Shown here one piece after another: positions 60,074-64,000 of a stretch of DNA of 64,000 nucleotides. The position numbers and the translations under genes are program-made. Source of the DNA: Mantamonas sphyraenae STR306 (taxonomy: Eukaryota; Protista; CRuMs); assembly GCA_026936335.1 (NCBI GenBank), contig JAPMXV010000029.1:372001-436000 (forward strand), in the 5' to 3' direction. The notes under the pieces are model-generated. The model was not told the DNA's origin. It was given only the letters and a program-made list of their open reading frames with translations, and did not search any database. Numbering within the stretch: the first letter of the stretch is position 1; every line of letters starts with the position of its first letter.

Positions 60074-60738
60074 TGGAGCAGACGGGCGCAACGATGACAC
60101 CGCGTCCGACAACATGGCGGTTGAGGACAGCCTGGACGACGACGCCGACGCAGAGGACGACCAAGGGGTGGAAGGTGGACAGGCGCATGTTGTGAGCCAG
60201 GAAGAAGCCGAGACGGGTGCGTTTTCCCTGCAGGACGTGGTGATGCCGATGCCCGGGCTGGAATGCCGTCTATCCCGAGCACGATGTGGGCCGTGCGTTC
60301 TACGAGGAACTGTTGGCTGAAGATGGCCTCAGCATCGAAAAGATCAGCAGGGCGGCGTCGCATCTGAACGTACGCGGCACGGTGCGACATGTCGTGATCA
60401 AGCCCGACCAGATGGAATGGCGCTTCATGCGCTACAACAACCCAAACGCCAACCTGGCCCTCACCGATCTGGACCTTTTGCAAGAGGACGACGACGACAT
60501 GGACGCGGAGACCGGCGACAACGAGGAGGAGGAGAGCGAGAAGAAACCCGAAGGCGTGGTTGACGACGGCTACTTTCTGGCTGTGCAGCTGCAGTTTGTG
60601 CTGCGTGCAGGCTGCTACGCCACCATGCTTTTGCGTGAAGTTATGGCGGGGGACACAAGCAAGGGCTGGCAGGCGACACAGTTTCATCGCAAACGGCCGC
60701 GACCCGATCATCAAGACGACGACGAGGAGGACCTTTGA
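58521..60738 (+). CDS. PUS7: TruD-family pseudouridine synthase PUS7; frameshift at ~60256
   Basis: Motifs LKARFTDFLVNE, GLKDKRGVTAQ, GFINYYGMQRFG, YVHSYQS and GCYATMLLRE. Removing one G gives MPMPGWNAVYP...FYEELL. Confidence 0.95.
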
Positions 60739-60755
60739 GGACATGGAACGCCAAT

Positions 60756-61386
60756 TCACTTGCTGTTCGACTTTTTCTCCTCGATCTCCTTGCGCGTGGT
60801 GGAGCCGCCTGAATGCAAGGCGCACATGGTGTGCGTGTGCGTGTGTGAGCCAGTGAAGGGGGTCGAGTTTCCCTCTCTCGCGCTCGCTTTCTCCGCTTCT
60901 CCACGCTCGACCTACCATAAAACGACGTCTTCTCGTCGTACTCCTTCTTGCCCACGTTCTGTAGCAAGCACCATTGAAGCGCATCACAGAGTCAGCGAGT
61001 CTGTGCAGCATCGTGTGGATGCGCAGCGACGGGGAGGATTGTCTGAGCAAAAAATGAGCGGTGGGCCGATCCCAAACTTACCGAATCCTGCTCCGCAGCC
61101 TTCTTGGCCACGTCTGTCAGATTGCCCTTGGGCGTGCGGTCGGGTACAATGATCTTGGAGCCCCAGCGTTGCTCCTCCTCCGACACGTCGTTGACGTAGT
61201 CGGCGTCTGCGAACGCAGGAGACAAACATCCGAGAGGTGTGAGCGTCGCCGTTCCTTGTCCACGATATCTCACACACACAACATACCGGTCTCCCAGTCG
61301 TCGTCATCCTCCTCTTCGTCGATCTCGCGGTTGTTGGACTTGGACTGCACGTCGCCGGTCTCGTGTTCTCGCAGGTACACGCTCAT
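60756..61386 (-). CDS. 106-aa cortactin/HS1 N-terminal-acidic-domain-only protein, 4 exons
   Basis: Exons 61386-61287, 61206-61082, 60958-60916 and 60808-60756 total 321 nt, with all introns GT-AG. Translation includes [25 protein letters not shown]...SFYGG. Confidence 0.85.
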
Positions 61387-61438
61387 TTGATGTGTTTTGC
61401 TGGACGCGCTCCGCGCACCAACCCAATCCATTGTCACC

Positions 61439-61938
61439 ATGGTACGTCAACACCGCACTGCACACACACACACACACACACAGCACTCACTCACTCACAA
61501 TGGCCCTCTGCCTTCTGCATCCAAAGTATATTGACCGCGTGGAAGTGGAAAACTTCAAGAGCTACCGCGGCAAGCAGACGATTGGGCCCTTTTCACAGTT
61601 CACGTCGGTGATTGGCCCTAATGGTGCTGGTAAGTAAAACACAGCAGTGGGTGCCTGCGTAACCCGGCACCTGCCGGCCTGTCAGCGTGGGGTTGTCCGG
61701 TTTTGCGCGCGTCCTGAGTTCCTGACACCGCTTGGCGCGTTTTTGGCGCGAATCAGGAAAATCGAATCTTATGGACGCCATCAGCTTTGTGCTGGGCGTG
61801 CAGTCATCGCACCTGCGTGGCACTCTGGGACAGTTTGCCTACACACCCAAGAGCCGCCAGGACGAGGTCAAATACGTCAGCGTGACGCTTGTACTGGCGG
61901 GAGTTCCCAGCAAGCACACTCGCCTTCCGCGACGCAAC

Positions 61939-61974
<36 letters not shown>

Positions 61975-64000
61975 GTGTCCAGCAGCAGCAGCAGGCGCTT
62001 CCTGGAGGATGACATGGATGAGGAAGAGGGCGAGGAGGAAGGCGAGGTGGAGCTGTACGAGGTGGAACTGCAGCGCATCTTGCGTCGCTCGGGCGCAAAC
62101 TGGACGTCGTCGTTCAAGTTCAACGGGTCGGCAGTCACGCAGGACAAGTACGACAGCTACCTGCAATCCATCAATATCCTGGTGCAAGCCCGCAACTTTC
62201 TGGTGTTCCAGGTCAGTGTAGCGTTGTACGGCGCCCGAAAAAGCGGGTGGCGCCCTTTTTTGGCGGGAAGCCTGACACCTGACACACAACCACCCCCCCC
62301 ACCAACCCCGTACACACGCACAACACGCACACTTGACACAGGGTGATGTGCAAAGCGTCGTGTCCACAAACCCCATGGAAAAGACACGGCTGTTTGAAAC
62401 CATCTCCGGCTCGGGAGCGCTGAAGGACGAGTACGAACGGCTCAAGGCGCAGGTGGACGATGCCAAGATGCAAACATTGGAGCTGCACAAGCTGGTCAAG
62501 GACAACCGCACGGAGAAGAAGCAGTACCTGGAGCAGAAGCAGGAGGTGGAAGAGTACGAGGCGCTTCTGGAACAGCGTGTAAGTGTGTGCCTGACCCCAC
62601 GCGCTGCAACGCCGGCGAAAAGCGAGTCCTGATCACTCTTTGCGTTTTTCCTGATCACCCACCCGCCCCACTAGACCGCGCGCCCTCCACCTGCCTATGC
62701 ACCCCTTGCACGCACTGACACGGTAAGCGGTGGCATCCCACACGACACAGAACACCGTGAATCTGCAGCAGGCGTTGTGGGAGGTGTACCACATGAACCT
62801 GGAGATTGGCGAGCTGCACGAGAGCGTGCGGCAGGTGCAGGCGGAGTTGGAGGAGAAGCGACACCAGTACAAGCTGGGCCAAGAGCAACTGAAGGAGCTG
62901 CGTCAGGAGGAAGCACGATTCCAGCGCGAACTGAGCAACATCGAGCGCCGCCAGGTGACCCTCAAGGAAACCGCACAGAAGCAACGCTCCGAGCACGTTT
63001 ATGCCACACAGGAGGCCCAGATGCGCCAGGACAAGATCACACAGCTGGAAAAAAGTGTCAAGGCTCTGGAAGAGGCACAGGACAAGCACCAGCGCACCAT
63101 TGCCGACCTCGAGAAGCAGCTGGACATTCGCCAAGCGTGACCAGGCTCGCTTCGAACAACAGGTCGAGGAGAACGCCACCAGCCAGCAGGGGCTCAAGCT
63201 GGGTGAGCAGGAACTGCGCGAGTATCGCAAACTGTATGTTGTCACCGTTTGACCTGCATACACACACACACACACACTCAGAGCTGCACTCACACACACA
63301 CACACACACACCACGTGCCACTCACAGCAAGGCAGAGGTCAAGACACAGACAAGCACACAGCAAGCAGAACTGGACACACTGCAGCGACAGGCCAGGAAG
63401 GACAAGGACAAGATGGCGGATCTGGAGCGACGCATGGCGGAGCTTGAAGAAGCGCGCAAGACACACACGGAGACGCGACAGCTGTCTGCAAGCAACCGCG
63501 ACAAGCGTGAGCAGTCCATTGTGCAGTTTTCTGCATCGCTGAACCAGATCGACGCCGAGATGAAGCAGCTCAATGCAGAACTCGCAACCATGCGCTCGCA
63601 GAAGCTGGAAACCGAGGCCGAACTGGAGCAGGTCTCTCTGCGCCTCAGCGAGGCCAGCGCAGACCACAGTGAGTCGGAACGCGAGGCCAAACAGCGCGAG
63701 TGCGTCGATTTCCTGCGCAATGCCCTGGGCGACAACGTGTACGGGCAACTGGGCGAGCTGTGTGAACCCGTCGACGATCGCTTCCGCATGGCCCTCACAG
63801 TGGTCCTGGGCCAGCACATCGACTCGGTCATTGTCGAGGACATGCGCACAGCCAAGGAGTGTGTGCAGTTGATGAAGGAGAAGCAGTTTGCGTCCATGAC
63901 GTTCCTGCCACTGGACTCCATCCGAGGCTCTGCCGTGCCCGACCACCTGCGCCGCATCTCCCAGACCGCTCGTCCAATCATCGACGTCGTCTCCTTTGAC
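61439..64000 (+). CDS. SMC1: Cohesin subunit SMC1, 5' part running off the window; frameshift at ~63128
   Basis: M|[13 protein letters not shown]...IGPNGAG|[27 protein letters not shown]|GDV, and hinge motifs VYGQLGELC and TFLPLD. Several GT-AG introns. Confidence 0.95.

What the first reader, a model, noticed from the sequence alone, without database searches (positions are those of the whole stretch)
60756..61386. Stand-alone 'mini-cortactin': only the Arp2/3-binding acidic N-terminus
Seen: splicing four small exons that the ORF track misses gives [106 protein letters not shown]. Known: [23 protein letters not shown] is the N-terminal acidic (NTA) signature of animal cortactin/HS1, and its DDW motif binds Arp2/3. 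The protein here stops just after a 'YGG' where the F-actin-binding repeats would begin, so it has no repeats, Pro-rich region or SH3. The stop lies 17 nt from the PUS7 stop, leaving no room for further exons. Inference: this could be an ancestral minimal Arp2/3 ligand (branch stabiliser or competitive inhibitor) that pre-dates the multidomain cortactin.
Basis: partly seen in the sequence, partly recalled or inferred. Interest (0 to 1): 0.8.

Follow-up and report, generated by a model that had tools for sequence, protein, structure and literature searches.

The report
Stand-alone cortactin Arp3-binding head in Mantamonas
A deep-branching protist far from animals carries a small four-exon gene that encodes only the Arp2/3-binding head of cortactin, and similar short genes exist in zoosporic fungi, so this actin-branch regulator module is older than the animal lineage it was assigned to.

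Summary
The stop lies 17 nt from the stop of a convergent TruD/PUS7 gene. All four exons have GC3 of 0.83-0.94.

Exon 2 alone finds only cortactin in the PDB (E 5e-4). Against a profile of cortactin N-terminal acidic (NtA) regions, exon 1 ends at profile position 25 and exon 2 starts at 27, so the motif is made whole only by splicing.

The genome matches Mantamonas sphyraenae (CRuMs) in size and contig number. It has Arp2, Arp3 and ARPC2. It has no HS1 repeat and no full-length cortactin.

New here: complete 102-119 aa genes with an NtA plus half an HS1 repeat exist in Gonapodya, Blastocladiella and Catenaria. The short form is therefore a small family that I found described in no paper. Published surveys place the origin of cortactin in Holozoa.

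The likely function is docking on the Arp3 acidic-tail pocket, as the Cort1-76 fragment does: co-activation with WASP-type factors and mild branch protection, without F-actin binding.

Whether the short form is ancestral or derived is unproven. The joined protein was never searched; all searches went exon by exon.

The parts
61287..61386 (-). Exon 1: ATG at 61386-61384, 33 codons plus the first base of a split Asp codon. It ends in the acidic run and Trp31 (TGG 61296-61294), then Glu-Thr.
   Evidence: Translation. It scores 10.6 bits against NtA profile positions 8-25. GC3 is 0.88.
61207..61286 (-). Intron 1, 80 nt, GTATGT..CGCAG, phase 1. It interrupts the acidic Arp3-binding motif between WET and D.
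   Evidence: Sequence. The profile matches of exons 1 and 2 become adjacent (positions 25 and 27) only when this intron is removed.
61082..61206 (-). Exon 2. It holds the rest of the inverted acidic motif (D-A-D-Y-V) and the conserved [13 protein letters not shown] stretch (down to 61154). A linker follows, then the start of the helix-like segment.
   Evidence: Translation. PDB hits are cortactin only. It scores 33.6 bits against profile positions 27-63. BLASTP gives E 2e-9 to a full-length cortactin and 1e-7 and 7e-8 to the fungal short forms. It is single-copy in the genome.
60959..61081 (-). Intron 2, 123 nt, GTAAGT..CTACAG, phase 0.
   Evidence: If the intron were retained, the frame would stop after 29 more codons, so the product stays short either way.
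60916..60958 (-). Exon 3, 14 codons plus 1 nt (KKEYDE..SFY). It is collinear with the KKEY-E..SF-GY segment that precedes repeat 1 in cortactins.
   Evidence: Translation. The match is weak but collinear (E 0.12 to P0036; profile positions 74-78). GC3 is 0.86.
60809..60915 (-). Intron 3, 107 nt, GTAGGT..ATTCAG, phase 1. It contains a CA-rich microsatellite.
60756..60808 (-). Exon 4. It completes Y-G-G, then a 14-residue charged tail and the TGA stop (60758-60756). It has no HS1-repeat sequence.
   Evidence: Translation. No Pfam hit. GC3 is 0.94.
61429..61440 (-). Two in-frame upstream ATGs (61440-61438 and 61431-61429). They would add 18 or 15 residues, so the start codon is uncertain.
   Evidence: The extension does not match the MWKA start of cortactins in the profile.
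60286..60738 (+). Last exon of the convergent TruD/PUS7-type pseudouridine synthase gene, with its stop at 60736-60738. It leaves no room for further minus-strand exons.
   Evidence: Pfam TruD positions 393-412 of 412. All ORFs upstream back to 49 kb are plus-strand genes.
61500..61629 (+). First exon of the divergent SMC gene. Its ATG lies 113 nt from the ATG of the small gene, across a (TG)n-containing spacer.
   Evidence: Pfam SMC_N positions 1-37.

Best explanation
This is a real four-exon gene of Mantamonas sphyraenae. It encodes a protein of about 106 aa, probably disordered, that is a homologue of the cortactin/HS1 N-terminal acidic (NtA) domain and nothing else. It keeps three things: the inverted acidic motif with the key tryptophan (W31, equivalent to W22 of cortactin), the following [13 protein letters not shown] stretch almost letter for letter, and a weaker copy of the linker and helix up to the YGG that opens repeat 1. 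It lacks any HS1 repeat, helical or proline-rich region, and SH3 domain. Inferred mechanism: W31 and its acidic neighbours dock in the basic pocket between subdomains 3 and 4 of Arp3, the site also used by the acidic tails of WASP-family activators. The rest of the chain runs over the Arp3 surface. By analogy with the isolated Cort1-76 fragment, it should not bind F-actin or activate Arp2/3 alone. It should co-activate with WASP-type factors and give some protection to branches. It belongs with the short proteins (NtA plus half a repeat) of zoosporic fungi, so the NtA module is older than Holozoa and can work as a free-standing protein.
For: Shown here:
- The gene model and frame hold, and all four exons show strong third-position GC bias.
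- Cortactin is the only PDB match of exon 2.
- The profile matches of exons 1 and 2 abut across intron 1.
- The locus is single-copy.
- The genome shows no HS1_rep, and a full-length cortactin query finds only SH3 domains plus this locus.
- The genome has Arp3 (519 bits to 1k8k_A), Arp2 and ARPC2.
- Nine of the ten basic residues around the Arp3 tryptophan pocket stay basic, and the hinge helix is identical.
- Complete short genes exist in Gonapodya, Blastocladiella and Catenaria, two of them closed off by convergent neighbours.

From papers:
- D20-V29 of cortactin is the Arp3-binding motif. Cort1-76 binds with a Kd of 2-5 uM, does not bind F-actin and synergises with NPFs (PMC10613254).
- NtA alone partly protects branches (PMC11102864).
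Against: Exons 3 and 4 have no significant similarity on their own. The helix segment has smaller hydrophobic residues than in cortactin (L, V, A for I, L, V). The N-terminal MWKA stretch, which matters for synergy in Cort1-76, is absent. The complex prediction of Arp3 residues 113-418 with exon 2 gave no answer. Arp3 R230 is Thr here. The big phmmer search found no close orthologue.
Confidence: 0.68

Rival explanations
1. The short form is derived, not ancestral. The Mantamonas gene would be a truncated remnant of a longer cortactin, either inherited and shortened or acquired from an opisthokont by horizontal transfer. The fungal short forms would be independent truncations.
For: The core motif is closer to the animal consensus (15 of 18 to L002) than to the fungal proteins (12 of 17). 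The YGG, and in fungi half an HS1 repeat, look like the stump of a repeat array. No NtA was seen here in any other non-opisthokont.
Against: The introns are Mantamonas-type and sit at positions different from those in animal and fungal genes. The N-terminus and the segment after GSK differ from holozoan cortactins and resemble the fungal ones (a Pro-containing segment, no GSGR). Two separate outgroup lineages both carry short forms. The gene sits between housekeeping genes on a contig of the published assembly.
Confidence: 0.3
2. It acts mainly as a competitive inhibitor. By occupying the Arp3 acidic-tail site without binding F-actin, it would block actin delivery by WASP/SCAR and damp branching, as Arpin does.
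For: The pocket is the same as for the NPF A domains and Arpin (PMC10613254). The protein lacks the N-terminal residues that Cort18-76 experiments show are needed for full synergy. The genome gave no Arpin hit, so that role could be vacant.
Against: Cort1-76 raises rather than lowers NPF-driven polymerisation, and NtA alone protects branches (PMC10613254, PMC11102864). The absence of an Arpin hit is weak evidence, because the control for that search rang nowhere.
Confidence: 0.2
3. It is not a working gene: a chance or decaying set of exons that is not expressed, or only exons 1-2 are real.
For: There is no RNA evidence. The protein is absent from the protein libraries searched. Exons 3 and 4 lack significant similarity.
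Against: The combined profile score is about 44 bits across a splice junction. GC3 is 0.83-0.94 in every exon, against 0.34 at second positions. The splice sites are canonical. The frame is intact and ends in a stop just before the neighbour. A 760-nt gene-free gap would be unusual in this compact genome.
Confidence: 0.07

Closest known systems
Cortactin (CTTN) and HS1 (HCLS1) of animals and choanoflagellates
   Same: The NtA domain is collinear and lies at the N-terminus, as in cortactin. It has an acidic run, the DDW tryptophan, ETD-x-D-[FY]-VNDVSE-x-EQRWG-x-K, then a linker ending in YGG.
   Different: It has no HS1/cortactin repeats, helical region, proline-rich region or SH3. It has no MWKA start. 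The helix segment is less hydrophobic. The protein is 106 aa against 450-600 aa. The organism is in CRuMs, not Holozoa.
Cort1-76 / NtA laboratory fragments (PDB 8TAH; NtA in 8P94)
   Same: It spans the same part of the protein. These fragments are the only experimental guide to what a free NtA does: it binds Arp3, does not bind F-actin, synergises with NPFs and partly protects branches.
   Different: The fragments are engineered. This is a natural gene with a diverged N-terminus and helix, so its activity may differ.
Short cortactin-like proteins of zoosporic fungi (Gonapodya M427DRAFT_209479; Blastocladiella 'Hematopoietic lineage cell-specific protein'; Catenaria BCR44DRAFT_36206)
   Same: They are 102-119 aa stand-alone genes with the NtA at the N-terminus and a stop soon after YGG. 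Like the Mantamonas protein, they have a Pro-containing segment after GSK instead of the holozoan GSGR.
   Different: The fungal proteins keep the first 18-23 positions of one HS1 repeat (Pfam hit above cut-off). The Mantamonas protein keeps only YGG. Intron positions differ.
Acidic (A) tails of WASP-family NPFs and of Arpin
   Same: They carry an acidic stretch with one tryptophan that targets the same Arp3 pocket.
   Different: They are C-terminal and bind with the opposite polarity. There is no sequence homology beyond composition.

Membership tests
Cortactin/HS1 family | N-terminal acidic motif with the DDW tryptophan (D20-V29 in cortactin) | tested here: met
   Exon 1 ends in DDDDWET and exon 2 begins, after the split Asp codon, with ADYV. 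They align to profile positions 8-25 and 27 onward.
Cortactin/HS1 family | Conserved stretch after the acidic motif (NDVSE-x-EQRWG-x-K) | tested here: met
   15 of 18 identical to a full-length cortactin at E 2e-9. The only PDB hits are cortactin.
Cortactin/HS1 family | Amphipathic NtA helix (I55-T76) that sits in the Arp3 subdomain 1/3 cleft | tested here: inconclusive
   The profile alignment places L63, V66 and A70 at the positions of I55, L58 and V62. The similarity is weak, and exon 3 is not significant alone.
Cortactin/HS1 family | One or more 37-residue HS1/cortactin repeats (Pfam PF02218) | tested here: not met
   No PF02218 hit in any exon or read-through ORF or anywhere in the genome. 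A full-length cortactin query finds no repeats, and its one weak hit lies in the eRF1 locus.
Cortactin/HS1 family | C-terminal SH3 domain | tested here: not met
   The stop at 60756 lies 17 nt from the convergent PUS7 stop. None of the genome's SH3 hits lies near this locus.
Cortactin/HS1 family | Binds Arp2/3 complex through Arp3 | not testable with these tools
   The target is present and 9 of 10 basic pocket residues stay basic. The complex prediction with exon 2 gave no answer.
Short NtA proteins of zoosporic fungi | Stand-alone gene of about 100-120 aa that starts with the NtA | tested here: met
   106 aa here, against 112, 119 and 102 (partial) aa in the fungi. The gene models were checked on DNA.
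Short NtA proteins of zoosporic fungi | Ends with the first half of one HS1 repeat (GYGG[KQ]FGV..DRMD.SA) | tested here: not met
   The fungal proteins hit PF02218 positions 1-18 and 1-23 above the cut-off. Mantamonas has YGG followed by an unrelated charged tail.

The most novel reading that the evidence does not exclude
The cortactin NtA began as a free-standing Arp3 ligand of about 100 aa in a common ancestor of CRuMs and opisthokonts, long before animals. Multidomain cortactin arose later in holozoans by growth of the repeat array and fusion to an SH3 domain. Mantamonas would preserve the barest living form, one that regulates Arp2/3 branches purely through Arp3 with no F-actin contact.
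Probability: 0.4. Interest if true: 0.72.

Novelty: new variant of a known kind. Interest (0 to 1): 0.6.

Why it matters
Three published surveys place the origin of cortactin in Holozoa or later (PMC3748353, PMC4824007, PMC2824662). Because Pfam models only the repeats and the SH3 domain, domain-based surveys cannot detect an NtA that lacks a repeat, as in Mantamonas. This gene, together with the fungal short forms, moves the NtA module back to at least the split between CRuMs and opisthokonts if inheritance was vertical. It also shows that nature uses the NtA alone. That offers a natural test of a debated question: what does the NtA contribute by itself (NPF displacement, stabilising active Arp3, or branch protection) when it is freed from F-actin tethering and SH3 scaffolding?

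Tried and rejected
- Word search for 52-166 aa proteins with exon 2 alone found nothing. This blank means little, because the later profile search over the same size range found 4,254 candidates.
- The phmmer search of exon 2 against 1.84 billion representatives gave only three repeat proteins that match by repetition. Cortactins fall below the threshold for an 18-residue match, and no close orthologue is in that library.
- Exon 1 alone found nothing in the PDB. Pfam found nothing on any exon or read-through ORF.
- Complex prediction with Arp3 residues 113-418 and exon 2 gave no answer, score 0.00. It is not evidence either way. The peptide lacked the tryptophan half of the motif and Arp3 lacked its first exons.
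- The ESM Atlas gave nothing usable for exon 2. For the Gonapodya protein it returned only HS1-repeat clusters.
- The weak repeat-like hit on contig 62 lies in the eRF1 locus, in an ORF with no HS1-repeat motif, and is spurious.
- The upstream in-frame extension does not match the MWKA start of cortactins.
- A convergent acidic-W motif was rejected, because the match runs well past the acidic part.
- Contamination was rejected. The neighbours, introns and composition are those of the host contig.
- The joined spliced protein was never sent to any search, fold or alignment. Every test was made exon by exon, by reference.
- No fetched contig was taken for human.

Full report
**The sequence**

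On the minus strand, an ATG at 61386 opens four exons joined by three GT..AG introns of 80, 123 and 107 nt. I translated each exon by reference.

The TGA at 60758-60756 lies 17 nt from the TGA (60736-60738) of a convergent plus-strand gene. That gene's last exon matches the end of the Pfam TruD profile. On the other side, the ATG of an SMC gene lies 113 nt away on the plus strand.

Every gene from 49 kb to 60.7 kb is on the plus strand. A minus-strand gene therefore has no room for further downstream exons.

All four exons have GC3 of 0.83-0.94, against 0.34 at second codon positions. The neighbouring ORFs have GC3 of 0.73-0.79, and the introns show ordinary composition. This is codon-position evidence that exons 3 and 4 are coding in the proposed frame.

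The first intron of the SMC gene (127 nt, GTAAGT..ATCAG) must be removed to restore the Walker A motif, and it looks like these introns.

Two in-frame ATGs lie upstream at 61440 and 61431, so the true start is uncertain.

**Is the resemblance to cortactin real?**

Exon 2 alone (41 aa) was searched against all PDB sequences. It finds only two chains, both cortactin: 8tah_H at E 5e-4 and 8p94_I at E 4e-3. Both match at residues 27-44.

A metagenome scan supplied cortactin genes for comparison. A word search supplied 56 cortactins, including a EukProt entry whose naming suggests a choanoflagellate transcriptome.

I built a profile of the N-terminal acidic (NtA) region from 23 of these sequences.
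- Exon 2 scores 33.6 bits at profile positions 27-63.
- Exon 1 scores 10.6 bits at positions 8-25 and ends exactly at W-E-T.
- Position 26 is the Asp of the split codon.

The motif is therefore whole only after intron 1 is removed. This supports both the homology and that splice.

Exon 3 aligns collinearly at positions 74-78. It shows K-K-E-Y-D-E..S-F-Y against K-E-Y-E-E-G-P-K-P-S-F-G-Y in some cortactins, but it is not significant alone (E 0.12). Exon 4 supplies the second and third residues of the YGG that opens repeat 1, and is then unrelated.

**Is it truly stand-alone?**

- No Pfam HS1_rep hit occurs in any exon or read-through ORF.
- None occurs anywhere in the genome.
- A 591-aa full-length cortactin searched against the whole genome finds many SH3 domains and this NtA locus, but no repeats.
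- Its single weak repeat-like hit falls in the eRF1 locus and is spurious.
- Exon 2 is single-copy.

**The organism**

The assembly has 25,061,354 bases in 78 contigs, and the window's GC content is about 0.58-0.60. The published Mantamonas sphyraenae FALCON assembly has 25.06 Mb, 78 contigs and 59.2% GC (PMC10492846). An earlier agent in this scan reached the same identification. Mantamonas belongs to CRuMs, which branch outside Amorphea.

**The target is present**

The genome encodes Arp3, Arp2 and ARPC2. The last Arp3 exon covers residues 113-416 and scores 519 bits to bovine Arp3.

Ten basic residues are reported to surround the tryptophan pocket on Arp3 (PMC10613254). Nine of them stay basic here, and R230 is Thr. 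The hinge helix is identical. WH1-domain proteins are present, so WASP-type activators are plausible.

**Relatives that change the picture**

I ran a profile search restricted to small proteins. Most hits were cortactin fragments, but three were annotated proteins from zoosporic fungi:
- Gonapodya prolifera, 112 aa.
- Blastocladiella emersonii, 119 aa.
- Catenaria anguillulae, 102 aa, partial at the N-terminus.

I checked the first two gene models on genomic DNA and the gene context of Catenaria.
- The Gonapodya and Blastocladiella genes are complete three-exon genes with stop codons.
- The Gonapodya and Catenaria genes are closed off by convergent neighbours.
- Intron positions differ from one another, from Mantamonas, and from the animal genes, where an intron sits just before NDV.

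The fungal proteins carry the NtA plus the first 18-23 positions of one HS1 repeat, and then stop. An ichthyosporean entry of 169 aa has the NtA, half a repeat and a charged tail.

After the GSK residues, the fungal and Mantamonas proteins share a Pro-containing segment in place of the holozoan GSGR.

So short, free-standing NtA proteins form a small family. The Mantamonas member is the barest one and the only one found here outside opisthokonts.

**Literature**

- Surveys place the origin of cortactin in Holozoa (PMC3748353, PMC4824007) or in the stem of choanoflagellates and animals (PMC2824662).
- A 2006 EST study of Blastocladiella lists one EST with 'cortactin' as best hit among animal-like genes, without comment (PMC1550239).
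- I found no paper that describes NtA-only or short forms. No paper in the library mentions cortactin together with Mantamonas.

**Mechanism (inferred)**

Cryo-EM shows cortactin D20-V29 in the pocket between Arp3 subdomains 3 and 4. This is the site used by NPF acidic tails and Arpin, but cortactin binds it with inverted polarity.

The isolated Cort1-76 fragment behaves as follows (PMC10613254):
- It binds Arp2/3 with a Kd of 2-5 uM.
- It does not bind F-actin.
- It does not activate Arp2/3 alone.
- It synergises with NPFs.

At a branch, NtA residues 21-79 run over all four Arp3 subdomains and end in a helix beside the hinge helix. NtA alone gives partial protection against debranching (PMC11102864).

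The Mantamonas protein keeps the pocket-binding motif and the following stretch nearly unchanged. I therefore expect it to bind Arp3 in the same way and to act like Cort1-76. It lacks the conserved extreme N-terminus, and its helix is weaker, so its net effect could differ. Competitive inhibition is the main functional rival.

**Limits**

- The spliced protein has no reference, so I never searched, folded or aligned it as a whole.
- The complex prediction with partial chains gave no answer.
- Whether the short form is ancestral or derived, and how widely it occurs among protists, remains open.

Noticed in passing
window 61387-61499: The divergent spacer between the small gene and the SMC gene is only 113 nt and contains a (TG)n run. 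Two further ATGs in frame with the small gene lie inside it.
   Followed up: partly
L017:187-1200: An environmental contig with 57% GC carries a cortactin-type gene start (MAWKAQAG, then the acidic-W motif). It has introns after the first 7 codons and between DFV and NDV. The source organism is unknown, and the contig ends before any repeats.
   Followed up: partly
L029:3737-5389: In Blastocladiella, a 527-aa WD40 beta-propeller gene starts 253 nt downstream of the short cortactin-like gene on the same strand. I did not check whether the two are ever joined in one transcript.
   Followed up: no
L028:3505-4658: In Gonapodya, the convergent neighbour of the short gene, 43 nt away on the opposite strand, has a faint SH3_9 hit on record. 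This is probably coincidence.
   Followed up: no
window 60286-60320: The TruD/PUS7 gene is split into two overlapping ORFs here, which implies a short intron. The gene also carries long poly-Ser tracts, as does the SMC gene at 61930-61990.
   Followed up: no
G000:C37:52691-76166 and C71:25481-42169: At least five conventional actin gene copies lie in two clusters. Arp2 (C42) and Arp3 (C7) are split by introns.
   Followed up: no
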